Below the pieces are notes generated by a model. The model had not been told where the DNA came from. It worked only from the letters and a program-made list of their open reading frames with translations, and searched no databases. A program made the translations under genes and the position numbers. This document shows, one piece after another, positions 313 to 41,620 of a stretch of 64,000 nucleotides of DNA. The stretch is from Macrostomum lignano. Its lineage: Eukaryota. Location: contig NIVC01000759.1 of the NCBI GenBank assembly GCA_002269645.1, positions 248,001 to 312,000 of the forward strand, given 5' to 3'. Within the stretch, counting starts at the first letter, position 1. The number at the start of each line of letters is the position of its first letter.

Positions 313-514
313 ATGCAGTCCAGCAGCGAGAGCCGGTCGGCTCAACTGGTCTTGATCTGCTTTGCCGTGCTTCAAATGGCACCGTCTGTGCTCAACTACT
401 CCGATATTGGTAAGAGTGATCCAGCTTCGGCTGGAGTAGCTGCAGGTTGCTTGGACAAGCCAGGCGGGTGTGACGAAGAGATGCTGCCTAGCCTTGCTGA
501 CTCACTCGTCGTCG
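313..514 (+). CDS. PKD1-like 5' exons: signal peptide (LVLICFAVLQMA) and start of first discoidin-like module
   Basis: ATG at 313, hydrophobic stretch, donor G|GTAAG at 409/410, acceptor TGCAG| at 445, donor G|GTATT at 514/515. The 36-nt intron is in frame and may be retained. Confidence 0.6.
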
Positions 515-3500
515 GTATTGAAGGTGGCGCGCAGCAGGCCATGTCACACCCCCACATAGCGTTGACTTTCTTGCAACGTAGAATAATTTCGGTCAATTTT
601 GTTGGCTGCAAAATCTTATTCCTAATTTCGGGTTTTGTTATACTGTTAAAATGATAGTCTAGTTGCGATTTACATTTTTCTAAGCCTTACAATAAAAAGT
701 ACTTCCTTAGCAGAATATTCTGGTCCCATCAACAGTTGTAAAAGTACCTCACTGTACTCTTAAAGGATAAAATGATCAATAATTCTTGAGTTCCTAAAAA
801 TTCTTTACGCTATCAATCACCGGCCATCAAAGCTCCTTTTAAAGGTTTCTAAGTGTCACGTACGTTCTTCTGGACGAAATAAATCTAGCTTAAGTAAGAG
901 AGTTGCAGGCGAGTCTTAGGGAGTTGCAGACGAATCCCAATCAGGTAAATCTCAATCACCTGCAGCGAGTCCCAATCACCTGCAGCGAGTCCCAATCACC
1001 TGCAAGAGAGTCCCAATCACCTGCAAGAGAGTCCCAATCACCTGCAGTGAGTCCCAATCACCTGCAAGAGAGTCCCAATCACCTGCAGTGAGTCCCAATC
1101 ACCTGCAGCGAGTCCCAATCACATGCAGCGAGTCCCAATCACCTGCAGCGAGTCCCAATCACCTGCAGCGAGTCCCAATCACCTGCAAGCGAGTCCCAAT
1201 CACATGCAGCGAGTCCCAATCACCTGCAGCGAGTCCCAATCACCTGCAGCGAGTCCCAATCACATGCAGCGAGTCCCAATCACCTGCAGGCGATGATCAG
1301 CCACTCGTGACCTACGGGCCGCACCAGGTCAGCGCAGTGGGCGCCTCGTACGCCGAGTTTCCGCCTGTCGCCGTGAAGCTCAGCTGGTCGACGGACGGCG
1401 AGCCCAGCCTGGCCAACCAGTCCTGCAACAACGGCTTCGCCGCTTCCGACTACCTGCTGTTCGAGTTCGACCTCGCCAACCTCATCTGGGGCTACGTGAT
1501 CGGCCAGGACTCGCCGGAAATCTACGTGAAGACATTTCACCTGGCCTACGGCAGCTTGCTGGAGTCGCTGCAGACCTACGGGGGCAGCGCACCGGCTCTG
1601 CTGCCGGGCATCAACAGCAGCGACATGATCAACCAGACCTACTCGCTGCCACACGGCAGCATCCAGGCCAGGGTGCTGAAGCTCACGCCGGTGGATTTCG
1701 TTGGCAACAAGTCGATCAAGATCGAGTTCATCGGTCTGCCCGCTGGTGAGGAAAATGCAGGGTTGTTACGGTGCCCCCTGGATAGCGCCTCCCCCCTCCC
1801 CCTCGAGGTGGAGCCTCTGGTATTGACGCCTCTCGCTGTCGACCCTCGGCACGCGCTGCGCCCCCTCCCCAAAGGCGCCTCCAGGACATAACCAGGTTCA
1901 CCAGGAGCTAAAATGACTCTGAATGGCGGGCTCGTGACTGTATTCTGCTGTCTAGGAGGCTAGCGGGTGTCGAAAGACTCAATATTCTACTCTCAAAACA
2001 GTACTTCCACTGTCTAAAAATGCTTAAAATGGACGTGAGGACTGGCGGACAGAGGTATAGTGCAAGATTCACCGAGCTGGCTTAAGAAGCTCTGCACCGC
2101 CACTTCACCTGCCCGGCCAAGCAAAATGAATTTGACTTACGAAAAGTAAAGTATCGGTACATACTCGGTGATCACTAGCAGCTATCCCAAGCTCTAATAT
2201 ACCTCTTCATCTAGCTAGTTAAGTAGACTGTCTTTATGACAGTTCAGCTCAGAAAATATTCACATGTGCCCCATCCAGCCCGGCACTTTGGGCTTCCGTC
2301 ACAAACACGGCAGCTCATTTTCCATTGCTCACTATTTCGTCTCCAAAGTGCGTCCGCACTGTATCCGGGCTCTTCTTGCTTAAGTTCTGCTTCAGTGTGG
2401 TTCAGCCTCCCGCAACAGCCATTGATGAAGCGCGCTCAAAAAGTCAGCTTTGCCATTTTCGCCTACCTATTAATGATAACGCGGTAGATTGTCCGTTGGC
2501 AGCTTTTTCTGCACCCACAGATAAAGCAGACCATTGCGAGCGTACTATTAAGCTCACGCCCAGCTTCCATCAGGTTGAGAGCAGCAAGGTCTGACAGATC
2601 ACGCTTCTTTAACTCAGGCGCATCTCCATTTCGATTGCAGAAAAGCTATCCAAATCCTTTAGCACCAGCACTACCCTACGCCGCTCTCTACCACATGCTC
2701 TCTTCCAGTCTCTCCAATACTGCCTTGTACGCAAACTCAGAGTGCTCCAACTTCGCTACTGGCTTCAATGCGTCACTCTGAAGGCACTGTCTAAGCTGCT
2801 ATAACTCGTACACCTGTAACGAGGGTGCAGCATCTTCTTTTGATATGCTTGCTTGAACCACGCTTTGCTGCCAGTTTTGCTGTGGAGACGAAAGAACATG
2901 TTTGAATATGTTTGGTTTTACGAGCGTATGTTTGAATCAGACCAAAAACATAGGGCACTGATCGACACAAAAAATGTCATACAATAAAATTTAATGCATC
3001 CTCTTACTAATAGTAATTTCTGATCGCAGATTTTTGACACTTCAAAACGACGCCACTTGCAGAGTGTCCGCCGATTGAGAGGTACAGACTGGTTCAGCCG
3101 ATCCCGGTGCAGATCAACTCAACATCTGTGACGCTCAGCACTGCAAACTCTCATCACACCGTGTTCTTAATGGACCTGTACCACCTGACCAACGTGACTC
3201 TGACGGGAGCCAACTGCAATCAGTCGCAGACGATGCTCGTCACCTTCGTCGATCATGATAACAATGCCGTGCGCAGCCCGCTGGTGAGTTGAGCTGCTCT
3301 ATTGTCAATGCGAGCTCCGCCTATTTGATCAGCAGAACTTTGACACGCATAGCGCCGCTTCAAATTGACAGAATTTGACAGCCAGCCCAGAGGACGAGCC
3401 CGGCACAATGTACGCCTTGAACGGTACCATCAACGCGGCGAGATTCAGAGTCTACTTCAAAAGCAGAGACTGCGAAAATGTGACCTTCAAACTTTATGGC

Positions 3501-6500
3501 TGCTTGGCAGACGGTATGTTGAATTCAAAAAATCATTTTTAGCTCAGGAAGTGCAACCTCTATTCTACGTGCGAGTAGAGATGAAAGCCAAGAGGAATGC
3601 CATAATAAAAGTATAACAACTTTTAAGTGATTCAGTAAGTCTTTGTGTTCCGTAAAATTTAGCTGTTTAAAAACCAGGCCATAAGATCATAGCTTTTCTC
3701 TCGAGAAATATAAACAGGTATTAATAAGGAATACTAATAAACAGTCGCCGTAGGGCTGTGACTTTTGTAGGCAACGCCTTCCAAGACATCGTCCCACAAC
3801 CAGTGCTGAGGCAATTCTGCCATTCTGCTGACTTCTGAGCACATAGAAGAGTGCGGATGCTGACGCAGGCATGCACTCACACAAACTCACACAAGTTGCA
3901 AAACAGCCCTGATTTTCTTTTCAAAAGACATGTGCACTCTTTGTGCTTTGGAGGCTGGCCTTCGAAAGTTTGTATCGCACGTCAATCCCCTGGCCAAGTT
4001 TTCGCACACAAGGCTCCACTGTTTAGCCTTGTAGCGCTAGCTTCCATAAGAAGTTTCTGGATGCTGGTTTTCCATTGAAGTTGAGAAAATTCCTCAAACA
4101 AACCCCTTACCGCCTCGAAACAATGAACAGCATAAAAACGCGCCATCTTTGCGCTTGAGAGCAGCTCAGACCAGGTTGAGCAGGTCGGCGAAGTCTGCAA
4201 ACAATAGGACGAGGAATAGCAACTCCGCATTGCCAGCTGCAGTTGGCAGTCCCCACGCCGGCGTTGGCTGCCCTGTCAAGAAGTTTGCGACCTGCTGCTT
4301 CACATTAGCAGAAACCAGAAGCTGAGATCTCCTACTCACTACCCAGTACTGTCTGGGCTTTTTTCGCCAATGTCAAACTCCTGTGCTTGTGTTGCAGAAA
4401 CACTGACTTGGTCTGAATGGAAGGCCCATCTTTCAGCTCAATTGTCTTCACGCATCCCAGCGCTCCCAACCCTCTCCCCTTTCTTTCAATATTTCTTTCT
4501 TGCTTCAAAAACACATTGCTTGAGTGCCCTCAGAACTCACCTCGGGAGTCCCAGCTTGGTCTGAACCGGTCGATGAGACGAGGGGGAGGGGCAGAGGCGA
4601 GGGACGGTGCAGGTCATTGAGCCACTTCTCAAGCTTGGGCTAAATAGCGACAATACAGACAGGAAAATTTGGTGGCAAAAATGCAAAGGGAGCTGCAAAG
4701 CTACTCAAAAACCTTGAACTGGTGCTCAATCAGCGTTAGCTGAGAGAACAGCTTTCAGCGGCTATGGTTTTTCGAGGATAATCGATGACAATCCAAGAAA
4801 AATACAGCGCATTCTGCCTCCGCCCTGTCTGCCTTATTCTTCCCCATAGCTACTGAGTGCCGGGGCAGTTCGCCCTTGAATACATGAACCACAAAAAACT
4901 CAAATCCGGGAACTTTGGCTGGAGACTCGGGCATGTTGCAGCTCTCATCTCTCACCCCTCATTTTTTAGCTGCCGACTGTTTGGGCGCACCAAGAATTAA
5001 TTATGCGCTCGTCCCAACCACCCCACAGAATGCCCCGCCTCGTCCTTCTACTTCAACGGCCAGTGCTACTTCGCCGCCAAGCAGCCGCAGCACCGCGTCC
5101 TGGGCCAGCAGCTTTGCGCCGGAATCCGCTGGATGGACAGAGGCCGCCTATTCCTGCCGCGCTCCTTCGAGGACAACATCATCGTCTCCATGTCGGCCTT
5201 GCAGTTCGCTGGGTCCCTGACCAGCGAGTTCATGGTCCACCTGGGCCTGGTCAGGGACGGCAGCGGCTGGGCGATCGAGGGCAGCCCCTCCGCGAAAATA
5301 AAGTGGAGCTTCTGGGAGCCGTTCCAGAGCCAGCCGGAGCACACCTTGGCACTGGCCAACCTGAGCCGCATGAGCTGGTGGGGCTCCACCAACTCGACCA
5401 TTTCCGCCCACGTCATTTGCGAGATCACTGCCGGTGAGGCCTGAAACACGCGATACGCGTTATTAGTGCATCTCGGAATCTCTCAGATCACCGAGAACGT
5501 CTTCTACTGGTAATTTTCACGAGCTAAAACACCCGCCACTCTACTTTTCTCAGCCCGAAGGTGGAACCGCAGCTGCGATGAGCCGTACTTCCTGCCCACA
5601 CTGGACCGCTACTACCCCACTAGCTCGCACGAGGTGGCCGGCTCCACGCCAGAGAACGTCTCCTTGTTCGAAGCGGTGAAGAGGTGCCTTGACGGCTCTT
5701 TCGTGGCCGACTGCAACTATGTCCGGCAGAGCGGGCAGCAGTTCGTCCTGACCAAGAAGCCCGAGAGAGACTTCCATGCCTTCAGCAACGAGGTTCTGAA
5801 CAGCTCCGTTGGAGTTCTTGTCTTCTGCAGGCGTGAGATTTCTATCGCAGTTAATCTTATTTTCAATTGTCTTCAAATCAGCTTGACTTGATGGGATCAG
5901 AACTTGAAGTGAGAACCCTAATCACCGAATTGCAGTACCTGAGGACGAGAAAGTGTTCCAGCGCTTCGGATCTATTAACAGAGTTTCGAAGCCTGCCGTG
6001 AGCACCACTGGGTTGCCCTTGTTCACTTCAACCTTCTGGACCGGAACTCGGCTGACAGTAAGATGAACGAGCTGGTGAAAAACAAGCGGGTGACTTGAAT
6101 ATACGTAGAAAAAATATAATTTCGACGAAAAATATTATTTCAGCTGATTCTACCAAAGAAATACCTGCTACAAAGCATGTTAATGCTTAATTTCATCCCG
6201 AACATTCTCTTCGTCAGTCAAGATCTCAACTTTGTTATGGAGTTTTACAACTATAACGCAAAGAGCTGGGACATGACATCGAATGACTTGAAACTGGGTC
6301 AACCGGTGAGTTTTTCTGAGAAACTTTACCAATGAACTGCAAACTTTACCAATGCACACTGCAAACTTTACCAATGCACACTGAAAACTTTACCAATGCA
6401 CACTGCAAACTTTACCAATGCATACTGCTACCAATGAACATTTTAACACTTTCGAGATGCTTCAGAATTGCATAAAAACAACTTTAACAGTCGGCGTTAT

Positions 6501-9500
6501 GTCGACTGTCTACTGGCTGACGCCGGCGCCCCGGACACTGCCGGTGGCGCGGCCTTTGTTCGCGCCCAAGCCATGAAGCGCGCCCTGTGACGCTGACTTT
6601 TGCCATCCTGACAGCGTATTTTGTTGTTGTTGTTATAAAAACAAGTTTTGATGCTTACCCTCTAAATCTACTGTTGAATTATTTTAGCTGTCTTTAGGTC
6701 TTTACTTTCATGCAGAAGACACAAGGAATTCGCTCCTGACGGACACAATTAATCAAAGTGAAGAGGCATCGAGAAGTCTGAAAAATAAAAGCTTGAGAAG
6801 GCAGCACTCCAGCCTTTCAGCTAATAAATTAAAAAAATTCATATTCCAGGCTCCAATAAAGATACCGAAGTCGACAATTTTCACCCCGGTGTACTACCTC
6901 ATCGTTAACCTGGCCTACACGAACAAACTGCGGTTGACGACAACGTGGGATCGCAGCTTAGGAATCAAAATGGATCTTTTCGTCCGAGCGAAAAACCTAA
7001 CAGGCAAGATGCCAAAGCTTGTAATTGCTTCCATTATTACCAGCAACATAAATTCATAATGACTTCAGATCCATTTGTTTGTTTGACAATGCGCATTACA
7101 GTGATTGATCAGGCAATCTGCAATGGCACTCAATCAGTAACGCTCGAGCACCCCTACCACGGATCCGCCACCCTGCCTTGCTTTCGAAACTCCCTGGTCG
7201 TGTACCAGAAGCTGTCCCCGAACCTGGAGACCGGACGCACCCCAGTCGACTACCGCACTGGATTCGCTCTGGGCCGACCCGCCATGGACTTCAACTTCAC
7301 GCAAGCTGACCAGATGAGCTTCTGGAACGGACTCGACTTCCTCGAGCTGCTGCCGACATACTTTGCGAGTCAGTGGCCGCTGGCACTGAGGCTGGAGGCC
7401 ACGAACTCGCAGGGACTCGGCAAGTATGTCGAGTGCAAAGAGTGGTGGGTCGGGTCTCGAGCGGGCGGCTACCCGATGCACGCGAAAGACTGCCGGACGG
7501 GAACTCTGGACGAGTACACCTTTGTTGAGCTGAACAACGCTCAGTTCGGCCTGTTCTCAAACCTGTCTTGTGCCCAGCCGCTCTCACCGTGGTGGCAAAG
7601 TCAGTGCGATGGCAAAAATCTGATCAAGCTGGCAAAAGACTCGAATGGAGCTCCTCGGTGGATGCCGGACCTGCCTGCCGACAACGGTGTGTCGGTTCGA
7701 ATGCGGCTGTTTGCGCCGAGTATGATCCCAAAGGGTGAGAAAAACACTTCAACTCAAATTTGGGTAACTAAAGTAAATTAAGAGTAACTCAAAGTTACTT
7801 CTTACAGCTTGGCTTTTCTGTTTCATTAATTATTGCTCAACTCATTTGCCTTTACCTATTTCGATCCGAATTTAGCAACAGAATCAGACCAAGTGAGCGA
7901 TGCGTGCACTATGGATGCCGAGTGCTCAAGTGAGAACATGACCGTGTGCATTCCTCGTGGCTCAGCGCTCACGCCTCAGTGCGGCTGCGCGAATCTTCAA
8001 GACCAGAGCCAGCCAGTCTGCACCATCACGGTGGACATGAGCATCGTTGCTTTTAACGTTACTTTCGACCCAGTGCCGGTTCGCGGCTGCGCCAGTCGGT
8101 ACACGGCAACAATCCATCTGAAGCACGCAAGTGGCAGCGCCGACATTCCAGAGGCTGCTCCGCCGAAAGTTCTGGCGAATTTTTTCTCTTACTTTCTGAA
8201 CAAGTCGTCAAGCGTGTATCCTCCAGTTGACCAGGAGTTTTACCTCCAACACAACCCTGTGACTGTCATTGAAGGCAACCTGCAAGGCTCATATAAGCTT
8301 TATGAGGAGTTTGAGTTCGTCATAACCGCCAACTTCACGATGCCGGAAGGAGGCCAGTGCGTCTCAGCGTCCTACCTGTGCATCGGCTTCAGCGCGTCGG
8401 AAAATGAAACGGTGCGCGACTCCGACCCGACTAATAACGCCTTATGCGTTGAAATCGATAGTTTGAAGGAGTGCCAGCCCTTAGGTGACACTGAGCTGAC
8501 AAATTATACATTGCTACATCTGACCCCAAATCCTCTGGTGAGACATCAGAATGTTTCTGTTGGGTACCATCTCTCAGTACACACCAGGAATGTAAGCAGC
8601 GGAATACAGGGTTCGGTGAATGACAACAACTTTATTGTACTTTTGCATCTTACTATCAGTAACTGCCAGAACCTGGCAGGCAATGACGGCCATGTCAAAT
8701 CATGCCTGGCTGAGTCGCTTTCTCGCATCGAAATGAGAGCCGCAAACGAGTCCGTGTTCAAGAGCCGATACGTCAGCGGAGACACTTTCTCTGTCAGCGT
8801 TCATGCTCCACTTTTTGAAATAAGCCAAAATCAGTGCAACAAGACGACACATTTCTGTGTTTTGCTAACGAGTTCAGTGAACTCGTCCTACTCGGAGAGC
8901 AACTTCAGCAACAGCTTGGCATGCCATCCGGTTGAGACATTTTGCACGGTTTGTAAGTATGGCTTGATATTTTTCAGATAATTTCTATACTTTTCATCGG
9001 TAATGACTGTTATAGTTATTGAAATTGCTTTCAGTCTCGGATATCGCACTGCAAACTGTGGCTCCGCTTCGCAACGCCAGCAACCCGTGGGTTCCGGAGT
9101 ATCGCCACACCGCCTCATTCTTATTTGTATTGCAACTGGTCAATGGGTCGAAGATCGACCCCGTGCTGTCTCCCAGCATCAATTTCGAACCCAACATTTC
9201 GATCATATTTCAAAACGCATCCTACGCTCCGCTGGTTATGGAAGGAATCGAATGCGTAGAGGAAGACCGAACTCAAGGCATGGAGGTTGGCCAGCTTGCC
9301 TATGTTGTATGCGATGCTGTATTCTTTCTGAGCTTCCAGCAGTGCACTGCGGAGCAGGTGACCCTGCGGGCTGGAATGATCAACCCGGAAAACCCCAGCT
9401 ACGCAGAAACCAATTTGGAAAATAACTGGAATGAAATTGAAATTTCAAACATTTTTAATTGCGCCGGTAAGATTCTCTATGCAACTTTTTAGAAGCCTAA

Positions 9501-12500
9501 AATTTCTCTTTTTTACACTCTAGAATATAAATAGCACAACCAAACTTTCCTACAGGCCTTAAAATTGATAGCTGGCGGGCAATTCATGATAACTTTACAA
9601 TGCCGGGTGTCGCAGCTAAGTTCCAAATCGCGTGGAGCCTCGGCACCTACATGGATTGCGTCATATCCGTCCAGGACGGGTACAGCGCCACGTGGAATTG
9701 GAAGATAAATGGGAGCATCGACAGCTATCGCAACTATAAATTTACCGTCAGTCACGTGCTGAATCAGCCGTATGGCGAATACTTTGTGAATTACAGTTGC
9801 AGCAATGAAATTAGCCATTTTAAAGAAACAAATATCATTCTGCTTAACCCCAACCTAAATACTTCCTTGACCATCACGACTCTGTACGAGCGCATGCCGG
9901 CACCAAACAATGTTACTTTTCTATTTCGAACAAACGGTACAGGCGATGGATACTTAAAGTTCAATTGCAATTTTACCTTCTATTCAGACAGCGTAAAGTT
10001 TTATCAGGACCTCAAGCTGTACTACGATTTTCCGCTCAGCATTTCGCATGTCTACGATCTTGAGCAATCTTCTGTCACTTCGAATGTGCAGTGCTGGAAC
10101 TCGGGCGGCAATTATACTGAAAACTTCGATCTTCTGTTTTATGCAGCATTTCAAATTTCAGGCGTCAAAATAAGCGTCAATAAATCAGTCCTGCTCACAG
10201 GAGAGCAGTTTCCGGTGCAGCTCACTGTTCAAAATGGTACTGATGTCACCTACACGGTGAACATGACTGATGGTACAAGCCAAGTGATTGTGCATCCCGA
10301 GCCTTTGTCATATACAGAGCCCGTTAACATCACCCACTCATTCAATGATCCTGGAGTCTATGACATCCATGTTCTGGCTTCTAGCCCAATTAATGAGGAG
10401 AGCTCAATTTTGTCTGGAATCATCGTACAGAACACCGTCACTTTAATGACTCAGCCTGAATATTTTAGCGCTAAAGCACCGCAATTTGACTTTCCTTTGA
10501 CCCACACTGGAGCTGTGCCTACGAATGTGACTTGTAAATTCATATTCTCTGAAGCAGAGCTCAATAGAACAGTTAGGCTTCAAAATTTTTCAGAACCTGT
10601 GGTCCTTGACTGCCCTTCACACCTCATCACTGAGGAAATGACTCTGTCGGTTCACTGCTGGAATTTAGTGAGTCAGTACGCCAAAAACTCAACTGTGGTT
10701 TGCAATGAGCCAGTGTCAGGACTTACAGCCAATGCCAGTCACGTGTTTGTCCAGACTGGTCAAAACTTGACAATTACTATTCAAGTGTCCAACGGAACAT
10801 CCGTCCAATTCACAACAAGCTTTGGTGACTCCAGCCCAGAAAAGGTTAAAACATACTCTAGCAAGTACGCGGCGAGCAGTGAGACTCGGTTGGCGCACTT
10901 GTACTCAGCTGCAGGAAACTACACTGTTATAGTCAACGCCTCGAACCCAGTGAGTTGGCAAACAGCTCAGATCAACCCAATCGTTGTTCTGAATCCACTG
11001 ATCAACGTATCCGTCACCTACAGACAAACCGTTCTGTGGCCGTTCGAGGGGGCTGAGTTCGTCATCAACAATGAGCCCAATATGCAAGCTGGTCTTGTTG
11101 TTTGCGATTTCGGGTTCTCTACATACGGATCGAAAAGAATCTTCATCGAAAACCTGACGGACAGCTCAAACGCAGTTGTGACATTCAAATATTCGGTTGA
11201 AGCCATTGGAACTCAGCGTGTGAGCATGAGCTGCTGGAACCCATTGAGCATTGATGGCATCGAGCGGAACTTTTCAATAGTTGTGCTCAAGGACTCTGTA
11301 AAAATAGCCAACTTTAGCACAAACGGGACGGTTTGGCTTGGCACGCCGGTCGAATTCGTGCTTGATATGACAAGTTTCCCAAACGATACCTGCATTCTCG
11401 TGTACTACAATCAGACCAGCCTAATTAATGAAATTTTCGGTGCGCATAATTCCTGCCGGTCCATCGCAACACCGAACAGTCCAGCCTATACACAGGTCAG
11501 TCCCTCTAACTTGCGAATCACCTGGAAGCGAGATCAATCAAAAGTAGGCGTCTATTCTGTCTTGGTTTTCGCCTACAACAATGTGAGCAATGACTCGGCG
11601 CAAACATTTGCCACCGTGATTGACATCCCTTGCTACAAGCCAAGGCTGAGACTGTTTGACTCGGACGCATCTCCATTGCAAGTGTCGTCAGTGCAGACAA
11701 TCAGGAGGTCCGAGCAAATCAACCTCACTGCCGTGGCGCCATACAACTGCTCCAAGCTGACCAACATCAGCACATACTGGACCATCATTGCTGTACAATC
11801 ATCTACCCAGCTTCCTCTGTGCACTCACAACTCCGATCAGTGCTTGGTTCAGCGTCGGGTGTTGCCATACGGGCTGTACAATGTCTCATTCACTGCCGAT
11901 CTGACTGTGGATGCTGCTATGGCAGAGACTGTGTGGATATTGCTGAACGTCTCAAAGACTCCATTGAGTCTAGAAGCTATTACTGGTCCGGAATATGTTT
12001 CATTCAATCAGACCTTCGTGCTAAATGCGTCTGCGACGGCCACGGACTTTGACGTGGAAGATGGAGATCTTAGCGGCATGACGTTCCAGTGGAGCTGCTT
12101 CAGACCTGAAGAGTCAGACTCAGCCAAAACCATCAGCATCCTATCGCAGACTGAAGCCAGAGCGCTCTCAGAACTGAGAGGCTGCTTCGGTAACGGACCC
12201 GGTGTCGTGTACTTGGGAAACGCATCCATTGCGGGATCCCTCACTGTGAACTCATTCGATCTTGTGCCGAACGCAAGCTATGTGTTCCGAGTCCGTCTTA
12301 CAAAAGACACCAGAGAGGTTTGGCAATCAAAGACTGTGTTTGTTGAGTCACAGCCGAAGCCTGTAGGCCGACTTGATTGCGAGCAGAACTGCGGAGCCAA
12401 AGTTGTCGCCAAGAGGCCGCTTGTCTACAGACTTGTGTGCGAGCAGAACTGTGGCCACAAGTTCTTTGCCGTGAGCAGCAACTTGACGATTGTTCGGCTC

Positions 12501-15500
12501 GGTGTCAGCGGAGACGAGATCGAGGGAACTCGCCAGTCAAGCAGCGATGGCCAGGAGCTCTCGATTTCGGCTGGCACACTGATGGAGAGCTCCTACTACA
12601 GAGTGATGGGACAGCTGTGGAATCTGGGTCAAGAGACTTCATACCTTGTTGCCAACATAACTGTGAATGGGCCTCCAGTAGGCGGCACCTGTCGTGTGGA
12701 TCCTCCTGGAGGTATGTGCTAGCAATTTAATAACAGTTTTGCATATTGCTTAGCAAATATCAATTTTTATTTTGTGCAGCGTTTTTTAAGATGGAAAAGT
12801 CTCCCATTGCTTAAGATTTTCTGACCTATAAGATAATTTTGGATTGTATCGCAAACGTTGTGTGACGGATCTGGTCTCCTGCATGAATTTTTCACTTCTA
12901 TTTGCTTCAGTGGTTAACATGAGGACGCTGGCCTATCTGACCTGCGCCAACTGGACGGAATTCGGAGCGTTCGTTGCTCCGCTGGCGTACTCGGCAACAC
13001 TCTTCCGGTGGGATCCGACTGAGTCGCCGACTCGATTCGACTCTAGTAGCGCCAGTTTTCCCACAGTTTTGCTGCCTGTCGGGGCAAGCAGCGGCTTGGG
13101 CAGCATTGAGTTTAAAATCGCAGATTCTCTTGGAGCAGAGGCGATCTTCACCATCAACATTTCAGTCAGTCTCAGAAAAGCTGTCAAATCTTTGGTCTGG
13201 GAAGTACGATTAAAATGAGACTTGCTCTCGATGTTTTAGATTTCGGCTCTGACGGGCACATCAAGCGAGTTGCTTTCTCTGTTGGAAAAGCTGCTGCACC
13301 CTCTCGACTCGATAATCGCAAGTTTATTCGCCTCCGGTGACTACAGCGCCGCGGCAGTCACCTTGAAGTCAATCGCGCTGGCCATGAATGCCTGGAACGA
13401 AGATGCCTACGGAGCAGCATTGTCTCCGGACGATTTGGCCGCATTCCAGCTGCGAATGACTGCGGTACAATTAGAGATTAAATGTCATTTACAAAGTGGC
13501 AAAAGTTTTAATTATTGTTCTACCTTTTCAGATGAGACTGAAGTATTTGAATTTTGTTAACGCTCTTCCGTTCAACTTCTCGGATGCGTTGCAAGTAACA
13601 ACCATTCTCTTGCGATTTGGAGTGAATTCAACAAGCCAGTTGGATATACCTGGACAGGTAATTAATGTTTGCAGATCAAGAAGCGTAAATAGTTTTTCTT
13701 TAAAATTGGCTTTATCTTTAAAAAACTTTCATCAGGAGCTTGCGGCAAAAACGCTGAGAAAAGTCATCGAACAAGCGCGTATCGAAAGAGCGAACCTGTC
13801 GCACAAAGCCAGCGAAGAAATTCAGGACAATCTACTCAAATCAGGGCTGAGCATTTGGAATGCCTCTGGATTTTGGGCTGGCAACTACAGTAACCGCAGC
13901 ATGGTCAAAGATGTCATGCTGAAGACACTCGACTGCATTGACTCTATAGGGCTTCTAGCGCTTGAGTCTGTCAGCAACTTCACAAAGGTCGAACCCGGCT
14001 TCGCTCTAATGGGCATAACACAGGACGTTCAGGATGCAAATGTCACTGGAGTGAAGGTGGAAACAGATATGGGAAGCGTCTCACTGCCCAGGTTCAGCGC
14101 GGCAGATCCGTCCGGCAAATGCAACATCACATTCATGATGAGCGCAGCCGATCCGTACCACTGGAGCCAGTCGGAGTCCAAAGTCACAACGTCTTTCCTT
14201 CGTGGCCGATCGCAAGGATGCAGCTTTTACGACTTTCCACCATCCCGTGGGCGATCAAGGCGGTCAGCTTCCTCTTCTCCGACCTATGAGATGCAGCTGG
14301 CCGGAGCTCAGGTACCGTTGCTCAGAGTGGCTAAGACTCCCACTGACAAGTGGCTCATGATGTATCACAGCTTCAATGCAACAGGAGAGGTCGTCCAGCT
14401 CGTCATCCAACCCGATGCTGGACATCAGCTCGAAGTTTTCCTGCACGAAGGCACCGCGCCAGATCCTCTTAACTACACTCTCCACCGAGTAGTGCCGCAG
14501 TCACTCAACTCGACCAATGACACCGCAACAAAGGAGCTGATTTTCATTCCAGCTGATATGTTCTCAATTAACCAAACGGTGTTCGTAGGAGTGAAGAAGC
14601 TGGGCTGCTCAAGGGACTCGTCTGGCTCACTGACTTGCAGCAACTGCACCTTGCTGTATCATCTGGGAATCTCCACTCAACAGTGCTACGCATGGGACAG
14701 CGGGGTCGACGAGTGGCGCCTGTTGGATAGCGCCAAGTGCCAGGTAAGACGACTTAAGTGACAGTCGAGCTCACAATTTTAGAGCTAGAATTCGAGTCTG
14801 ATTTGCAAATCGATCACTCTAACTTTCAGGCAAGCGAGCAGACGGCGGTGGCGAGGCCGGCTTTCAAGGTGAACCTATTCGGCAGCATCGGAGCTGGAAT
14901 CTCATTCGTGCCCAACACGATCGACTTCGGCAAGCTGTTCGAAAACTGGCAGGGCAAGCTGAGCGAAAGCAGGGCAGTGCTGTCTGTTGTGATCGTTCTG
15001 TGGGTTCTGTTCATTCCTCTGGCAGTGTTACTGAGACGAATGGACCTGCGGGATGCACAGAAGGTGAGCAGTCAGCCCAGCTCTGATGAGTCGTGTTTTA
15101 TGTCTTGTAAACCAGTTGACTTACTGTGAATCGTCTCTCATTTCAGTTTCAATTTTTGCCCCTGAAAGACGAGCGGGAGCAGAAAGGCTTCGTCTACAAA
15201 ATTGAGGTGTTCAACGGGTCGAAAAGAGGCTATGAAGTCCCTGTTGGAGTCTTCATCTCAGTTAAAGGCCTGAATGCGAGCGAGCTACTGAGAACTCTGG
15301 ATGACGGAGAGAGACGGGTCAGCTTCTTGTTTTTTTACTTTCCGAATTTTTTGATTCAAGGTAAACTGATTTTCAGATTAGTTACAATTCGAACCTTACA
15401 GAACTTTGAAAGCGGTGGTGTTGACAACTTCCTGATGACGACTAAAGCGCATCTGGGTGACATTCGATCCATCTGTCTGACATTTGACAAGACCGAGTCC

Positions 15501-18500
15501 GGTGCCGGCCGATGGTACGTCAGTCGCCTGATCGTCACTGACTGCACCAACGACAACAAGTACATCTTTGTGATTGAAGACTGGTTGAGTCCGGGCATCG
15601 ACTCTGCTGTCAACTGCGCCTCATCGATCGACCTCAAGTTCTCAAAGAACCTCGTCCGCAACCACCTGAGCAGACGGATGCAGGATGACCACATCTGGTT
15701 TTCAATGCTGCGACGGAAAGTGGACACAAACTTCAGTCGATTGCAGCGTCTCGGAGTGTGCTGGAGTCTACTCTTCATGACGATGATTGCCAATGCCATG
15801 TGGTATGAGCGAACTTTGTGTATTCAACTTCAAAGTATCTCATTTTTACAATAAGGATAAAGAGTAAAAGTAGTAAAATGAAATCCATCAACCTCTTGCT
15901 TGATTTGCCCTGTCTGATTCCTGCAGGTACGAAGTCGCCGACAGCTCGTCGGAGGCCTTCCGAATCGGACCGGTGAAGGTTTCTTACGGCTCCCTCATCA
16001 CTTCAATACTCGGTGCGCTCACAGTGCTGCCCGTGTCCATGGCGACTGTCCTGCTGTTTCTCAAGTCCAAGCGACAGCCGCAACATATCGAGCCTGCGCA
16101 GCGGTACCGACCTCAGTCGAGTCGAAGTCGGCGCGTCATCAACAGCGATGCGGCGATGACCGAGGATGTGACTGAGTCTGAGGAGGAAGAGAAGACCTGG
16201 ATCTCTAAATTCTCTCTGCCTCACTGGTGCCAGTACGTTGGTTGGGTGCTTCTCGTTTTAAGTGTGCTCACTGCCGGCGTGTTCATTGTCTTCTATGCAA
16301 TGGACTGGGGCAAGGAGAAGTCGGAAGGCTGGTTGCTTGCGTTTTTCTTTTCCTTCTTTGAGACGGTGTTGCTTCTCCAGCCGCTGAAAGTGTTGGCTGT
16401 CGGGTTGGTGCTGGCTCTGCTGATGAGGAAGGACTACGACTCCATGGATGCCCACAGCGTCCGAGTTCGCGAGATTCATGACGGTCGAGGTGAGATTTTG
16501 AGTGTTCTGAAATACTTTCTTTTATGCTGTAGAAATATGTTATTATTCATCAAATTTCAGAGAAGTTCATGCTTCTCCAAGACGTCCTCGCTTCGCAGTC
16601 GAACGACGCACTCCGCAAGAAGGCAAAGTCAACAGCGATCAGCATCGGCCTGAACCTTGCGTACCTGTTCCTTTTGTACTGCGTCTGCTATGGCTCCATG
16701 GATCCGGTCGTGTTTCACCTGAACAACGGCTTGAAGATGCGGCTTACCGTCAACCAGCCGAGTCCTCAGTTCAGCCTTGACAAGGTTTGCAATAAGGCCC
16801 TTTTTGCAATATTGGGATACAAGTTGTGCTCACTGTTTCTTATGTTTGCACTTCCCTGACGAACTCCAGGTGCAGAAATGGGAGGACATTCACACCTGGC
16901 TGAACCGCACAGTTCTACCAAATCTCTATCCGACTGTGGCTGCGAATGGCCAACCATTGAGTGAAGCTGAGCAGAAGTTCATCTCCGATGGTGTTGGCTT
17001 TCGGTTGGGTCGCGTGAAGCTGAGACAGCTCAGGGTGCGTCCCGTGTGGCGCGACTCTCTGGCAGTGTCTGCCGAGTACAGTGCGAGCACTGAAGATCGC
17101 AGCTGCTACGGCATCGGCTGGCGCACCCAACTGCCCTGCAACCACACTGGGAGCGGCCTTGACGCTGCATTCCACGCCAGAACGGTCACCCCGTGGCCAA
17201 CATGGGGCACGTACAACTCATACAGCGGAAGGGGCTACGTGCTCGACCTGCCAAACAACTTCTCTAAAGCCATCTCGCTCCTGCAAGAGGCCACGCATTG
17301 CCATTGGATTGATAACTACACACGAGCCGTGCTGCTTGAATGCAGCTTGTTCTACCCTGACACCAACTTCTTTACATCCGTGTCCATCCTGACCGAGCTG
17401 CCTCCGTTCGGCGGCGCCTTGAGCTCCGCCAGTCTGCGATCAACGAGCCTTTACCGGTACATCGGCGCCAGCGGAGCCCTTCGACTGTGTGCTGAGCTGC
17501 TGGCCGCTGCAATCACTCTGGTACTGTTGCTGCTGCAACTGCGGTCTTGTTGGCTTCAGGGCTTCTCAAAACACTTCTCCAATCCGTGGAATGTGTCGCA
17601 CCTGCTCACAAACCTCACCATGATTGCCGGCCTCGTGTTTCTTCTGCTGCGCAGCTTCGCCACAGTTGCAGCCCTGGAGTCCATGCAGAACTCCAACTCT
17701 GGCAATCTGGAAACTGTCATGTTCTTCGACGAGTCGTTCTACTACTGCCTCGGCATCGCCATGTTCCTCGTCCAGATCGGCTTTCTCAACCTGGTCCGCT
17801 ACTCCCGCAGTCTGGCCCACCTGTCGGGCACTCTGAGGAACTCACTGTCGGAGCTGAGGTCGTTCTTCTGGGTGTTTCTCGTAATCTTCTTGGCCTTCGC
17901 CTTCATCGCCAATCTGGTTCTGGGACCCGTGGACGGAGAGTACCGCAGTCTGATGCAGACGATGATCACACAGCTGTCCGTGATGCTGGGAAAGTTCAAT
18001 GCCACTTTTGAAGACAGCCGCAGCGCCCTGTACAAGATCCTGTTCTTCTCCTACACATTCACGATCGTGTTCATAGTGCTGAACATCTTTGTGGTTCTGC
18101 TGAATGAGAGCTATGCGGATGCGACCAACTCCAGCGACGACGAGCAGCAGCAGGAGGCTTTCCAGGTCGTCGACACTGTCATCCAGTCGTTTAAGTCCAT
18201 CTTTCGTTTGGAACGCCAACCGCAGTACTGTGATTTTGGTAAGTGAAACGTCCGACTGCAATGATTTTGCACAGTTGTCATAATAGTTTCCACCATAATT
18301 AGATCCAATACTTGTAAATGCAAAAACGTTTTAGTCAGTTCTCAGAGGTATATGACTCGACATAATCATTATAACGCAAACTTTATGAATCGTCCCATTG
18401 TCGGGAAGTCTTCAGATGATGGTTAGCTCTACCAGTCGATGCCAGTCAGCTCTAGTCAGATTAGATTACAGGCAGGGGGCTGTGTGCACCTTGGCGCACT

Positions 18501-26200: not shown

Positions 26201-27975
26201 ACTAGGTTCATTAACCTCTGAAATGTACCGGGGGCATTGGATAATCCCTGTGCCATCACCTGGTACTCGAACTGTCCTCTAGTCAGGGTGGAGAAAGCTG
26301 TCATGGGCTTATGTTCTTCCTTAATTGGGACCTGCCAATAGCCTGAGTTAAGATCGAGGCTACTGAAGAATTGGCTTCCTGTGAGATTAGAGAAGGTTTC
26401 TTGGATATTCGGGAGGGGATAGGGGAAATAGTTCACTCGCGAGTTTAACACTCGGAAATCGCTGACAATGCGAATGGTGCCATCTTTCTTTGGCACGATG
26501 ACCAATAGGGTGGAATAGGTGGAATAGCAGGGACGGATGGGATTTTTCGCTAGCATATCGTCTAGCTGGGCGTCAACCTGCTTTTGGAGATGGGGAGGAA
26601 TTCGGCGAGTAGGGATTCTCACAGGGGTGTTGTCTTTCAGAGAAATTTCGTGGGTCACTAAATGAGTTAGCCCCATATCGAGGTCATGTTGAGAGAAAGC
26701 TTCTCGGTGTTCTTTTACTAATGCTACTACTGCTGCTCTCTGTTCAGTAGTCAATTCGGAACCAATGCTAATTTCACTCACCCACTCTTCTTCAGTGGCT
26801 TGGACCTGATTGACACGGGCTGAGTCTTGTGCTTCTGCTGCTGATTGCTGATCTGATGTCGGCGGCGACAAATAGAGCAGATCCTTGGCCTTCACGGGCT
26901 TAGCGAGCCCTACCAGTGCAGACTTAGGCAATTTCACTTCGACGGGATGCCGATTCACAATTTCGACGACTGCGGTGCCTTGCTGCATGGTGACCAGAGT
27001 CGGGATCATTTCGATCGTTAGCTCTTTGGCTCTTACGCCATCACCAATTGTTTCTATGGTCATTGGGGCGCCATAGTTAGCTTCGGCATTTTTCGCCATT
27101 CTTACTGGAATGCGCAGTGCGCTGTTCGCAGGGATAATTGCCTTTTCTTGAGTGTACACTCTGCAGACTCGTACAGGCATATGCGTGTACTGCATAGGTA
27201 TGCAGGCTCCTTCTTTCAGGATCAGCATCCCTTTTGTCAGATGAATGCTTTCGCACTGCTCAAGAAAGAATTCCATTCCCAAAATGTTGTCACATTCGTG
27301 GCCACATAATAGGAACGTTATTTCAATTCGAATATCTCCAAACTCAACAGCAACGGAAATTTCTCCTTCTAGCTGTACTGTGGCTCCGTCAAAAGTAGAC
27401 ACTCTTCTACTTGTACTTTTGATTTGCTCAGGCTTGAAAATCTTAGACCAGACTGACTTACTAAGGAAATTATTGCTAGCTCCAGTATCTAGCAGGAAGT
27501 CAATCTCTTGGCGATTGATGTTGCCTACTACGATCGCTTCGTAGCTCTTGGGGCTGATTAGCTCGAGTTTGGCATTGGCTGGAGTCTTCTTGGGTTTGCG
27601 GCGGCGATTTCGACGCGACTTCTTGAACTTGACAGTCGTCGGCGTGATGACTGAGGTCTCGGCGATTGACACATTGGGTGAAGTAAGCAATTGGGATGAT
27701 GCTGCAGCAGATGCGAGAGCTGCATCAGCAGGTGCGGGTGCTGACACTGTAGACGATGCAGGCATAGTGGACGCATTTGGTGCATTTCGCGTATATACAG
27801 GGTGCATTTTCGCATTGGGTGCATAAGCATTTCGCTTGCGTCTTTTTACAAGTTGCCATCCTCCGTTTGCTGTATCGCAAGCGGGTTGGCGGGGAATTTG
27901 GGAGGCCTGCATTTCGCTTGGGGCTCTGCTTGAGGGACGTGGCCTCGACTTCGGACCCTCGCCATTCAGTTTCCC
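23182..27975 (-). CDS. pol: Pol (PR-RT-RNase H-integrase), reached by -1 frameshift; two 1-bp indels in RT
   Basis: FLLDTGAS (PR); [25 protein letters not shown] (RT); LDTDAS, ELLA, TDHK (RH); [25 protein letters not shown] (IN). Assembled from ORFs 26065-27912, 25779-26198 and 23182-25860. Confidence 0.93.

Positions 27976-35910: not shown

Positions 35911-41620
<5,710 letters not shown>

What the first reader, a model, noticed from the sequence alone, without database searches (positions are those of the whole stretch)
313..9466. Polycystin-1-type channel with a multi-lectin ectodomain (3 discoidin-like + CTLD + FReD + EGF/Ig-like)
Seen: phase-consistent exons join these modules upstream of an intact PKD/REJ/GAIN/11-TM polycystin. 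Known: vertebrate PKD1 starts with LRR-WSC-PKD-CTL, PKD1L2/L3 with CTL/SUEL, and urchin REJ with EGF/CTL/CUB. Inference: this combination may be an undescribed carbohydrate or microbe-sensing receptor-channel (chemosensory, immune or gamete recognition). Novelty is not verified.
Basis: partly seen in the sequence, partly recalled or inferred. Interest (0 to 1): 0.75.

Follow-up and report, generated by a model that had tools for sequence, protein, structure and literature searches.

The report
Flatworm polycystin-1 gene with lectin-like modules
This is an intact gene of about 4,000 codons for a polycystin-1-family receptor/channel subunit of the flatworm Macrostomum lignano, and its unannotated front end carries very divergent discoidin-like, C-type-lectin-like and fibrinogen-like modules, a modest new variation on a known theme.

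Summary
The exons are real. I rebuilt a 24-exon plus-strand gene (313..18948) with a 12,000-nt CDS encoding 3,999 aa and a single terminal stop. All nine module boundaries are in phase 1. A codon model trained only on the polycystin exons scores every upstream exon as coding in its predicted frame.

The body is a PKD1-family protein by Pfam: PKD x2, REJ 1e-46, PLAT, Polycystin_dom and PKD_channel. No GPS/GAIN match was found.

The organism is Macrostomum lignano. UniProt holds only 5'-truncated paralogue models, which confirm the junctions of exons 10-21.

No upstream module hits Pfam, and two single-sequence AlphaFold runs failed (pLDDT 32 and 35).
- exon 2 is F5/8C-like (z 7.5, 5.1, 3.2)
- exon 5 is CTLD-like (z 8.3, 3.1)
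- exon 10 is fibrinogen-related (z 8.4, 5.9)

The other two "discoidin" modules and the "Ig-like" modules have no support. The canonical CTLD sugar/Ca2+ residues and the fibrinogen Ca2+ loop are missing, so "multi-lectin" overstates the case.

Verdict: new variant of a known kind, moderate interest. Whether exons 1-9 sit on the same transcript as exon 10 onwards is inferred, not shown.

The parts
313..409 (+). Exon 1: ATG plus a signal peptide (MQSSSESRSAQLVLICFAVLQMAPSVLN...). Ends in phase 1 at TTG|gtaagagt.
   Evidence: Hydropathy peak at aa 9-27. Codon LLR +0.35.
953..1289 (+). Tandem repeat in intron 1: a 20-nt unit, 16.6 copies. Each unit carries CACCTGCAG, and the last copy supplies the exon 2 acceptor.
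1290..1745 (+). Exon 2 (phase 1-1, 152 aa): module D1, distantly F5/8C (discoidin)-like. It lacks the flanking disulfide cysteines.
   Evidence: SW z 7.5 vs lactadherin C2, 5.1 vs neuropilin-1 b1 and 3.2 vs FVIII C2; phmmer --max P 5e-5 and 2e-4. No Pfam hit. LLR +0.64, GC3 0.89. AF2 pLDDT 32.
3063..3283 (+). Exon 3 (phase 1-0): first half of module D2 (4 Cys, fold unassigned).
   Evidence: No similarity to F5/8C references or to D1.
3372..3513 (+). Exon 4 (phase 0-1): second half of module D2.
5029..5433 (+). Exon 5 (phase 1-1, 135 aa): module D3, a divergent CTLD. The C0-C0' and C1-C4 cysteines are present. C2-C3 and the EPN/WND motifs are absent.
   Evidence: Full-length PDB alignments to DC-SIGN-family CTLDs, E 1.4-3.5. 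SW z 8.3 (0 of 20,000 shuffles) and phmmer P 1e-5 vs DC-SIGNR; z 3.1 vs MBP-C. No Pfam hit. AF2 pLDDT 35.
5554..5832 (+). Exon 6 (phase 1-1, 93 aa): module D4, a 4-Cys module of unassigned fold.
5936..6057 (+). Exon 7 (phase 1-0): module D5, part 1.
6144..6305 (+). Exon 8 (phase 0-0): module D5, part 2. Weakest coding score of all exons 1-12 (LLR +0.20).
6850..7003 (+). Exon 9 (phase 0-1 with GC donor CAG|GCAAGA; alternative end 7020 with GT donor): module D5, part 3.
   Evidence: 96% identical to M. lignano A0A1I8JK18 (P0007), where it is joined to exon 10.
7102..7734 (+). Exon 10 (phase 1-1, 211 aa; alternative start 7113): module D6, a divergent fibrinogen-related domain. The CA..WW..C pair is kept and the Ca2+ loop is deleted.
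   Evidence: SW z 8.4 (0 of 20,000 shuffles) vs fibrinogen gamma C and z 5.9 vs ficolin-1; phmmer P 1.5e-4 and 4e-4. An exhaustive phmmer search found only two M. lignano proteins. No Pfam or PDB hit.
7876..8952 (+). Exon 11 (phase 1-1, 359 aa): an EGF-like six-Cys motif followed by Cys-rich modules of unassigned fold (17 Cys, 12 N-glycosylation sequons).
   Evidence: Nearly all cysteines are conserved in three paralogues. No Pfam or PDB hit.
9035..9466 (+). Exon 12 (phase 1-1, 144 aa): unassigned module. It is the fastest-diverging part between paralogues (73% and 36% identity).
9556..12711 (+). Exon 13 (1,052 aa): PKD repeats and most of the REJ domain.
   Evidence: Pfam PKD 4e-24 and REJ 1e-35. 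REJ 1.3e-46 on the spliced protein.
12911..13164 (+). Exon 14: end of the REJ region.
   Evidence: Junction matches P0004 (...NIS|ISALTG).
13240..13464 (+). Exon 15.
13532..13657 (+). Exon 16.
13736..14743 (+). Exon 17: region before TM1, where a GAIN domain would lie. No Pfam match.
14830..15063 (+). Exon 18: degenerate GPS-like stalk (..AFKVNLFGS.., no HL|T) and TM1.
   Evidence: The motif reading is my inference.
15147..15317 (+). Exon 19: PLAT, first part.
15402..15802 (+). Exon 20: PLAT, second part, and TM2.
   Evidence: Pfam PLAT 4e-9..
15927..16489 (+). Exon 21: TM3-TM5.
16561..16784 (+). Exon 22: TM6.
16870..18238 (+). Exon 23: polycystin (TOP) domain and TM7-TM11 with the pore loop. 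LGK sits where PKD2L1 has its LGD filter.
   Evidence: Pfam Polycystin_dom 1e-33 and PKD_channel 3e-21. PDB PKD2L1/PKD2 1e-39 with alignment. 92-98% identical to M. lignano PKD_channel proteins.
18860..18948 (+). Exon 24: short helical-looking tail (MDSRLLTLMEKFEEMQHALEAAVFDKRG) and stop codon TGA 18946-18948. Predicted.
   Evidence: A similar tail is present in paralogues P0001 and P0008.

Best explanation
The region is the 5' half of one intact Macrostomum lignano gene of the polycystin-1 (PKD1/REJ) family, with 24 exons encoding about 4,000 aa.

Order of parts, N- to C-terminus:
- a signal peptide
- an exon-shuffled array of extracellular modules: F5/8C-like, unassigned, CTLD-like, 4-Cys, unassigned, fibrinogen-related-like, EGF-like plus Cys-rich modules
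- PKD repeats and the REJ domain
- TM1, PLAT and TM2-5
- a TOP domain and a 6-TM channel-like region

Most likely mechanism (inferred from the family, not shown here): it is the receptor-type subunit of a heteromeric channel with a PKD2/TRPP partner, probably on cilia of sensory cells or on sperm. Binding of a ligand, or mechanical load on the long ectodomain, would gate or tune cation entry.

It carries Lys where TRPP channels carry the filter Asp (LGD->LGK), so it is unlikely to form a cation pore on its own. The N-terminal modules are binding modules that derive from lectin-type folds but have lost the canonical sugar/Ca2+ residues. Their ligands may be proteins or non-canonical glycans.
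For: Shown by tools:
- A single open 12,000-nt CDS across 24 exons with consensus splice sites.
- Coding-type codon usage in exons 1-12 under a model trained only on exons 13-23.
- Every module boundary is in phase 1.
- Pfam REJ, PKD, PLAT, Polycystin_dom and PKD_channel.
- Closest solved structures are PKD2L1/PKD2 (1e-39), PC1 6a70_B (8e-34) and PKD1L3 (4e-25), with LGD aligned to LGK.
- Hydropathy peaks for a signal peptide and about 11 TM segments.
- M. lignano UniProt models reproduce every junction from exon 10 to exon 21, and one of them joins exon 9 to exon 10.
- Module identities rest on targeted Smith-Waterman and phmmer tests against references verified in PDB (for verification; 62, 64, 65, 72 for the tests).
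- Cysteines of exons 11-12 are conserved among three paralogues.

Inferred:
- Partnership with a TRPP subunit and the site of expression. Planarian pkd1L/pkd2L genes are expressed in sensory neurons (PMC11448475). Sea-urchin REJ proteins are sperm receptors that carry CTLDs (PMC1934368).
Against: - No transcript evidence links exons 1-8 to the rest.
- Public paralogue models start at exon 10 (P0004, P0006), or read intron sequence upstream of exon 9 (P0007).
- The E9-E10 junction needs either a GC donor or a weak acceptor.
- None of the N-terminal modules reaches Pfam thresholds.
- Both AlphaFold runs were uninformative, so the fold assignments rest on twilight-zone sequence statistics.
- No GPS/GAIN was detected.
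- Function, partner and expression were not tested.
Confidence: 0.7

Rival explanations
1. There are two genes. Exons 1-9 encode a separate secreted multi-module protein. The polycystin mRNA starts at exon 10, for example by spliced-leader trans-splicing, which is common in M. lignano.
For: - UniProt models P0004 and P0006 begin exactly at the first full codon of exon 10.
- If exon 9 is left unspliced, its frame stops at 7054-7056, 45 nt before the exon 10 acceptor.
- The E9-E10 junction lacks a strong canonical solution.
- Trans-splicing is widespread in this species (PMC8629364, PMC5730564).
Against: - Exon 10 begins in phase 1 and has no ATG followed by a signal peptide, which a protein with a very large ectodomain ahead of TM1 needs.
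- Only 98 nt separate exons 9 and 10.
- Paralogue model P0007 contains exon 9 fused to exon 10.
- All module boundaries share phase 1, including E9|E10.
Confidence: 0.15
2. The window copy is a decaying duplicate in this neopolyploid genome. It is damaged at the exon 9/10 junction, so the upstream modules are no longer expressed with the channel.
For: - The GT-AG path used in paralogue model P0007 (donor after GKMPKL, acceptor before IHSIYLTMRFT) runs into a TGA in the window.
- M. lignano carries recently duplicated subgenomes (PMC10733133).
Against: - There are 12 kb of coding sequence in 24 exons with no internal stop.
- Codon bias is retained in all exons.
- Two other in-frame junctions exist.
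- P0007's own N-terminus is read-through intron sequence, so that model is not a reliable standard.
Confidence: 0.07
3. The F5/8C, CTLD and FReD resemblances are chance or compositional effects, and the N-terminal modules are lineage-specific folds unrelated to lectin families.
For: - No Pfam hit at E<=10.
- No PDB hit for exons 2 and 10 in database-wide searches.
- An exhaustive search with exon 10 found only Macrostomum proteins.
- AlphaFold gave no usable model.
- The shuffle null ignores local sequence order.
Against: - In 7 of 7 reference tests the predicted module was the best of nine.
- The best scores were reached by 0, 0 and 1 of 20,000 shuffles.
- Independent phmmer P values were 1e-5 to 4e-4.
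- Each module was replicated with a second family member.
- Reversed sequences score at the null level.
- The alignments cover the family's landmark positions: CTLD cysteines and the WIGL position, FReD TVFQ/GF/FWLG/LR/CA..WW..C, and F5/8C WLQ.DL..V.G...QG...YV...Y.VAY...FPGN...ARF.RI.P...L..E..G.
Confidence: 0.1

Closest known systems
Human polycystin-1 (PKD1; structure 6a70_B) and PKD1L2/PKD1L3
   Same: PKD repeats, REJ domain, TM1-PLAT, 11-TM layout, TOP domain and a 6-TM channel-like end. One CTLD-type module sits in the ectodomain. Size is about 4,000 aa against 4,303 aa for PC1.
   Different: - No LRR, WSC or LDL-A modules were detected.
- It has an F5/8C-like and a fibrinogen-related-like module instead.
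- Only two PKD repeats are detected by Pfam, against 16 in PC1.
- No GPS/GAIN match, and no HL|T motif.
- The CTLD-like module is unrecognisable to Pfam.
Sea-urchin receptor-for-egg-jelly proteins (SpREJ1-10; PMC1934368)
   Same: PKD1-family proteins whose N-termini combine CTLDs, EGF, SUEL, WSC and PKD repeats ahead of REJ. Their lectin modules evolve fast, as exons 11-16 do here between paralogues.
   Different: No F5/8C or FReD modules are reported for SpREJ. SpREJ CTLDs are recognisable carbohydrate-recognition domains. A sperm role is demonstrated there and is unknown here.
Planarian PKD1-like genes (Smed-pkd1L-1, -2, -3; PMC11448475)
   Same: Flatworm PKD1-family members with REJ, PLAT, polycystin and channel domains. 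They are expressed in ciliated sensory neurons, which makes that the default expectation for this gene.
   Different: That paper describes them as lacking the complex N-terminal ectodomain, which it says is found only in chordate PC1. This Macrostomum gene has about 1,400 aa of extra modules ahead of its PKD repeats.
M. lignano UniProt models A0A1I8JK18, A0A1I8JIH8, A0A1I8JK13, A0A1I8GK20, A0A1I8JK36
   Same: Paralogous or homeologous copies of the same gene. Identity is 73-100% by exon for the first group and 36-95% for A0A1I8GK20. Junctions are the same from exon 10 to exon 21.
   Different: All are fragments. None contains exons 1-8, so the N-terminal architecture is not in the public protein set that I could reach.

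Membership tests
Polycystin-1 (PKD1/REJ) family | REJ domain | tested here: met
   Pfam PF02010, E 1.3e-46, profile positions 6-447 of 452.
Polycystin-1 (PKD1/REJ) family | PLAT/LH2 domain directly after the first TM segment | tested here: met
Polycystin-1 (PKD1/REJ) family | 11 TM segments, with a C-terminal TOP domain and a 6-TM PKD channel region | tested here: met
   Polycystin_dom 9e-33 and PKD_channel 3e-20. Hydropathy peaks are consistent with 11 TM segments; TM2 is a weaker peak and was read by eye. PDB PC1, PKD2 and PKD2L1 hits.
Polycystin-1 (PKD1/REJ) family | GAIN domain with GPS autoproteolysis motif (HL|T) | tested here: not met
   No GPS or GAIN Pfam hit on the spliced protein. 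The stalk reads ..AFKVNLFGS.. where PC1 has ..RHLTAFGA.. (my reading). Several family members are also uncleaved, so this does not exclude membership.
Polycystin-1 (PKD1/REJ) family | PKD (Ig-like) repeats in the ectodomain | tested here: met
   Pfam PF00801, two stretches, E 8e-22. The two repeats are similar to each other, z 13.8.
F5/8 type C (discoidin) domain | Match to the family profile (Pfam PF00754) | tested here: not met
   No hit for exon 2, exons 3+4 or exons 7-9 at E<=10.
F5/8 type C (discoidin) domain | Significant similarity to bona fide members over the beta-sandwich core | tested here: met
   Exon 2 only: lactadherin C2 z 7.5 (1 of 20,000 shuffles; phmmer P 5e-5), neuropilin-1 b1 z 5.1 (P 2e-4), FVIII C2 z 3.2. 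Exons 3+4 and 7-9 give z<=1.4, so the feature is not met for them.
F5/8 type C (discoidin) domain | Disulfide linking the N- and C-terminal cysteines | tested here: not met
   Module D1 has a single Cys. D2 has a Cys near each end but no sequence similarity to the family.
C-type lectin-like domain (CTLD) | Match to the family profile (Pfam PF00059) | tested here: not met
   No hit at E<=10.
C-type lectin-like domain (CTLD) | End-to-end similarity to solved CTLDs, with the conserved cysteine framework | tested here: met
   Alignments to DC-SIGN/DC-SIGNR chains cover residues 2-133 of 136. z 8.3, 0 of 20,000 shuffles, phmmer P 1e-5; MBP-C z 3.1. C0, C0', C1 and C4 are aligned. C2 and C3 are replaced by Leu and Ser.
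C-type lectin-like domain (CTLD) | Ca2+/carbohydrate site (EPN or QPD, plus WND), which defines C-type lectins proper | tested here: not met
   In the alignment EPN aligns with QSQ and WND with WGS. This is a CTLD at most, not a predicted Ca2+-dependent lectin.
Fibrinogen-related domain (FReD) | Match to the family profile (Pfam PF00147) | tested here: not met
   No hit at E<=10. No PDB hit at E<=10, although at least 68 FReD chains are present in PDB.
Fibrinogen-related domain (FReD) | Significant similarity to bona fide members across the B and P subdomains, including the CA..WW..C disulfide pair | tested here: met
   Fibrinogen gamma C z 8.4 (0 of 20,000 shuffles; phmmer P 1.5e-4), aligning D6 residues 29-174 to gamma C 37-193. 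Ficolin-1 z 5.9 (P 4e-4).
Fibrinogen-related domain (FReD) | Ca2+-binding loop and ligand pocket residues | tested here: not met
   A 6-residue gap lies opposite DNDKFE of the gamma chain. His after the second Cys is replaced by Asp (alignment). The functional meaning comes from established knowledge of gamma C and the ficolins.
All three lectin-type folds | Three-dimensional fold | tested here: inconclusive
   AlphaFold2 single-sequence models of exon 2 (pLDDT 32) and exon 5 (pLDDT 35) were unusable. No fold search was run.

The most novel reading that the evidence does not exclude
A flatworm-specific polycystin-1 has recruited three recognition folds normally used by soluble immune or adhesion lectins (F5/8C, CTLD, FReD) onto a TRPP-type channel complex. 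Its middle ectodomain modules are diversifying between recently duplicated copies: exon 12 is 73% or 36% identical, against 98-100% in the membrane part. This pattern is expected for a gamete-recognition or microbe-recognition receptor that signals directly through ion flux.
Probability: 0.2. Interest if true: 0.6.

Novelty: new variant of a known kind. Interest (0 to 1): 0.35.

Why it matters
Polycystin-1 proteins are known to carry variable adhesive or lectin-type N-termini, so the principle is not new.

Three things are new here:
1. A flatworm member has a complex, PC1-sized ectodomain, although planarian PKD1-like proteins are described as lacking one (PMC11448475).
2. The ectodomain contains F5/8C-like and fibrinogen-related-like modules. 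I found no report of these in this family (one search returned no paper), but I could not query architecture databases.
3. The whole 5' part, exons 1-8, is missing from the public protein models of this species that I could reach.

M. lignano is a model for sensory regeneration and for sexual selection. It has transgenesis and RNAi, so expression and function can be tested directly.

The case also shows that profile libraries can miss very divergent extracellular modules that targeted pairwise tests still detect.

Tried and rejected
- Pfam on raw open segments and on correctly spliced modules, at E up to 10: nothing for any of the eight N-terminal modules.
- The search for homologous proteins with the 1,394-aa N-terminus and with exon 11: no hits. 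These nulls are unreliable. The exon 11 search missed UniProt proteins that contain exon 11 at 85% identity, which I found by other routes.
It found two Macrostomum proteins and nothing else.
- The look-up of encoding contigs for P0001, P0002 and the 1,040-aa ORF of exon 13: not on record. No paralogue DNA and no transcript contigs were obtained, so dN/dS and junction checks for exons 1-9 were not possible.
- AlphaFold2 single-sequence runs on exon 2 and exon 5: pLDDT 32 and 35. I did not run fold search on them because the matches would be meaningless.
- PDB phmmer with exons 2, 10 and 11, and with a three-paralogue profile of exons 11-12: only chance-level hits.
- A PDB search of D2+D4+D5 joined by GGGGS linkers returned artefacts, namely linkers of scFv and NS2B-NS3 constructs. 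This was my error, and the search is uninformative.
- tblastn and blastp of modules against the window and against each other: no second copy and no internal repeats. D2 and D5 against D1: z<=1.3. D7 and D8 against the gene's own PKD repeats: z<=2.5.
- An exon 14 donor at 13203/13206 was rejected in favour of 13164, after comparison with P0004.
- I considered feeding AlphaFold an alignment of true family members and rejected it, because that would bias the model towards the family fold.

Full report
**What is in the sequence**

Reading the plus strand gives 24 exons with consensus acceptors and donors. The first is ATG 313..409, which encodes a signal peptide with a hydropathy peak at aa 9-27. 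The twelfth ends at 9466.

After correcting the exon 14 donor to 13164, the exons concatenate to 12,000 nt. This is 3,999 codons plus one terminal stop at 18946-18948. The protein is therefore about 4,000 aa, not about 4,600.

Every boundary between protein modules lies in phase 1: signal peptide | E2 | E3+4 | E5 | E6 | E7-9 | E10 | E11 | E12 | E13. This is the classic signature of exon-shuffled extracellular modules (established knowledge). Nine boundaries sharing one phase would be improbable by chance.

**Are the upstream exons coding?**

I trained a codon log-likelihood model only on exons 13-23, the part Pfam recognises as polycystin, against intron sequence.
- Each of exons 1-12 scores +0.20 to +0.64 bit per codon in its predicted frame.
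- Each scores negative in the other two frames.
- The best of 59 intron windows, in its best frame, reaches +0.08.
- GC3 is 0.57-0.92 in exons 1-12.

This matters because exons 2 and 5 are so GC-rich that all three frames are open there. ORF length alone would not choose the frame.

**The weak link**

The E9-E10 junction has no obvious canonical solution. An enumeration of all in-frame donor/acceptor pairs leaves two plausible paths:
- a GC-AG intron (CAG|GCAAGA at 7003, acceptor at 7102 or 7069)
- a GT-AG intron (CTT|GTAATT at 7020, weak acceptor at 7113)

**The polycystin body**

Pfam on the spliced C-terminal 2,606 aa gives:

| Family | E-value |
|---|---|
| REJ | 1.3e-46 |
| PKD (two stretches) | 8e-22 |
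| PLAT | 4e-9 |
| Polycystin_dom | 9e-33 |
| PKD_channel | 3e-20 |

No GPS or GAIN match appears, even though the query spans the E17/E18 junction. By my reading, the stalk has VNL-F where PC1 has HL|T, so autoproteolysis is not predicted.

The closest solved structures are:

| Structure | E-value |
|---|---|
| PKD2L1 and PKD2 | about 1e-39 |
| PC1 (6a70_B) | 8e-34 |
| PKD1L3 | 4e-25 |

In the printed alignment, the LGD of PKD2L1 aligns with LGK here. From established knowledge, that Asp is the selectivity-filter residue of TRPP channels. A Lys there argues that this protein is a PKD1-type partner subunit rather than a pore-forming homotetramer.

**Organism and public models**

Exon 23 is 92-98% identical to Macrostomum lignano UniProt entries.

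An exhaustive phmmer search of 1.84 billion representative proteins with exon 10 found only two proteins, both from M. lignano.
- P0004 (A0A1I8JIH8) and its cluster-mate P0006 start exactly at the first full codon of exon 10. P0004 reproduces every junction of my model from exon 10 to exon 21.
- Cluster-mate P0007 (A0A1I8JK18) also contains exon 9 fused to exon 10. Upstream of exon 9 it reads through intron sequence.
- None of these models contains exons 1-8.

Identity to these paralogues is mosaic:

| Exon | Identity to P0004/P0007 | Identity to P0005 (A0A1I8GK20) |
|---|---|---|
| E9 | 96% (P0007 only) | - |
| E10 | 97% | 95% (partial) |
| E11 | 85% | 55% |
| E12 | 73% | 36% |
| E13 | 83% | 62-66% |
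| E14 | 91% | 39% |
| E15 | 82% | - |
| E16 | 74% | - |
| E17-E23 | 98-100% (E21-E23 against best-matching P0001/P0002/P0008) | - |

The species is a recent hidden polyploid (PMC10733133, PMC12869490), which explains the multiple copies. Nearly all cysteines of exons 11-12 are conserved in the three copies.

**What the N-terminal modules are**

Database-wide methods fail:
- no Pfam family at E<=10 for any of the eight modules
- no PDB hit for exons 2, 10 or 11
- nothing for a three-paralogue profile of exons 11-12
- single-sequence AlphaFold2 gave pLDDT 32 for exon 2 and 35 for exon 5, so no fold search was worth running

The only database-wide hint was exon 5. It gave end-to-end alignments to DC-SIGN-family CTLDs at E 1.4-3.5.

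All nine module segments were compared with seven reference domains.
- fibrinogen gamma C
- ficolin-1
- FVIII C2
- lactadherin C2
- neuropilin-1 b1
- MBP-C

The seventh, the DC-SIGNR CTLD, was copied from the output.

| Module | Reference | SW | z | Shuffles reaching score | phmmer P |
|---|---|---|---|---|---|
| Exon 10 | fibrinogen gamma C | 77 | 8.4 | 0 of 20,000 | 1.5e-4 |
| Exon 10 | ficolin-1 | 61 | 5.9 | 0 of 1,000 | 4e-4 |
| Exon 5 | DC-SIGNR CTLD | 71 | 8.3 | 0 of 20,000 | 1e-5 |
| Exon 5 | MBP-C | 37 | 3.1 | 11 of 1,000 | - |
| Exon 2 | lactadherin C2 | 62 | 7.5 | 1 of 20,000 | 5e-5 |
| Exon 2 | neuropilin-1 b1 | 53 | 5.1 | 0 of 1,000 | 2e-4 |
| Exon 2 | FVIII C2 | 43 | 3.2 | 14 of 1,000 | - |

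No other pair exceeded z 3.1. Reversed sequences scored at the null level.

With 63 comparisons, the three best P values survive Bonferroni correction. The alignments cover the landmark positions of each family.

I conclude that exons 2, 5 and 10 are very divergent relatives of F5/8C, CTLD and FReD domains. This is homology at the twilight level, not membership by the families' own profile thresholds.

Exons 3+4 and 7-9, the other two 'discoidin-like' modules, show nothing against three F5/8C references or against exon 2. Exons 6, 11 and 12 remain unassigned, apart from an EGF-like six-cysteine spacing at the start of exon 11. Exons 11 and 12 are also not detectably similar to the gene's own PKD repeats.

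**Is it a multi-lectin?**

The alignments argue for caution.
- In the CTLD-like module, EPN aligns with QSQ and WND with WGS, and the inner disulfide is lost.
- In the FReD-like module there is a 6-residue gap opposite the gamma-chain Ca2+ loop, and the His after the second cysteine is Asp.

Fold ancestry from lectin-type domains is supported. Carbohydrate binding is not predicted by these residues.

**How it most likely works**

Shown: the architecture of a PKD1-family 11-TM protein with a large, glycosylated, cysteine-rich modular ectodomain.

Inferred from the family:
- assembly with a TRPP/PKD2 subunit, as in the PC1-PKD2 and PKD1L3-PKD2L1 complexes
- location on sensory cilia, as for planarian pkd1L genes (PMC11448475), or on sperm, as for sea-urchin REJ proteins (PMC1934368)
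- gating or tuning of cation entry by ligand binding or force on the ectodomain

The fast divergence of exons 11-16 between copies is compatible with a recognition role. It could equally reflect relaxed constraint or patchy gene conversion.

**Rivals**

1. Exons 1-9 form a separate gene, and the polycystin mRNA starts at exon 10 by trans-splicing. This is favoured by the 5' ends of P0004 and P0006 and by the awkward junction. It is disfavoured by the lack of a start codon and signal peptide for the downstream part, the 98-nt gap, the shared phase, and the E9-E10 fusion in P0007. I give it 0.15.
2. The window copy is a damaged duplicate. I give it 0.07, because 12 kb of intact ORF with retained codon bias argues against it.
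3. The module resemblances are chance. I give it 0.1.

**Novelty and verdict**

Variable lectin or adhesion modules on PKD1-family proteins are well known: CTLD, SUEL, WSC, EGF and LRR. This gene is a new variant of that kind.

It is a flatworm-lineage combination that includes F5/8C-like and FReD-like modules. A literature search returned no paper combining these terms, but I could not query architecture databases. The 5' exons are absent from the public protein models I could reach.

Interest is moderate. The claim that all modules sit on one transcript, and the fold assignments, both still need RNA and structure evidence.

Noticed in passing
window 953-1289: A 20-nt tandem repeat (CAATCACCTGCAGCGAGTCC, 16.6 copies, 94% matches) fills the end of intron 1. 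Every unit contains an acceptor-like CACCTGCAG, and some units contain GTGAGT. The last unit provides the exon 2 acceptor. All three frames are open across the array, so use of an upstream copy as acceptor could add repeat-encoded peptide.
   Followed up: partly
window 6321-6428: A 22-nt tandem repeat (AAACTTTACCAATGCACACTGC, 5 copies) lies in the intron between exons 8 and 9.
   Followed up: no
window 21308-28931, minus strand: Four long ORFs lie end to end. Together they encode aspartyl protease, reverse transcriptase, RNase H and integrase (Ty3/gypsy-type LTR retroelement pol), about 2.4 kb downstream of the polycystin stop codon. The ORF at 27966-28931 has only a sub-threshold Maf hit, and 21308-23245 matches nothing. 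I did not search for LTRs and did not print the element.
   Followed up: partly
window 33996-34613, plus strand: An ORF with an integrase zinc-binding domain (H2C2, E 7e-13), probably a fragment of a second retroelement.
   Followed up: no
window 44395-45384, minus strand: An ORF with a complete guanylate kinase domain (Pfam E 1e-54), probably an exon of a MAGUK-type or guanylate kinase gene on the opposite strand.
   Followed up: no
window 50001-52000 and 37455-38526: Strongly skewed base composition at 50-52 kb (GC skew +0.47, AT skew +0.40). Overlapping long ORFs lie on both strands at 37.5-38.5 kb and 50-51.5 kb, with only low-complexity Pfam matches. This looks like simple or satellite-like sequence rather than genes.
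   Followed up: no
window 7876-13657 (exons 11-16) versus 13736-18238 (exons 17-23): Identity to the M. lignano paralogue models is mosaic: 73-91% in exons 11-16 but 98-100% in exons 17-23 and 96-97% in exons 9-10. The third paralogue falls to 36% in exon 12. This could reflect diversifying selection on the middle ectodomain or patchy gene conversion between homeologous copies.
   Followed up: partly
window 15318-15401: The intron between exons 19 and 20, inside the PLAT domain, is 84 nt long, in frame and free of stop codons. Retaining it would insert 28 residues rather than truncate the protein. Paralogue model P0004 splices it out.
   Followed up: partly
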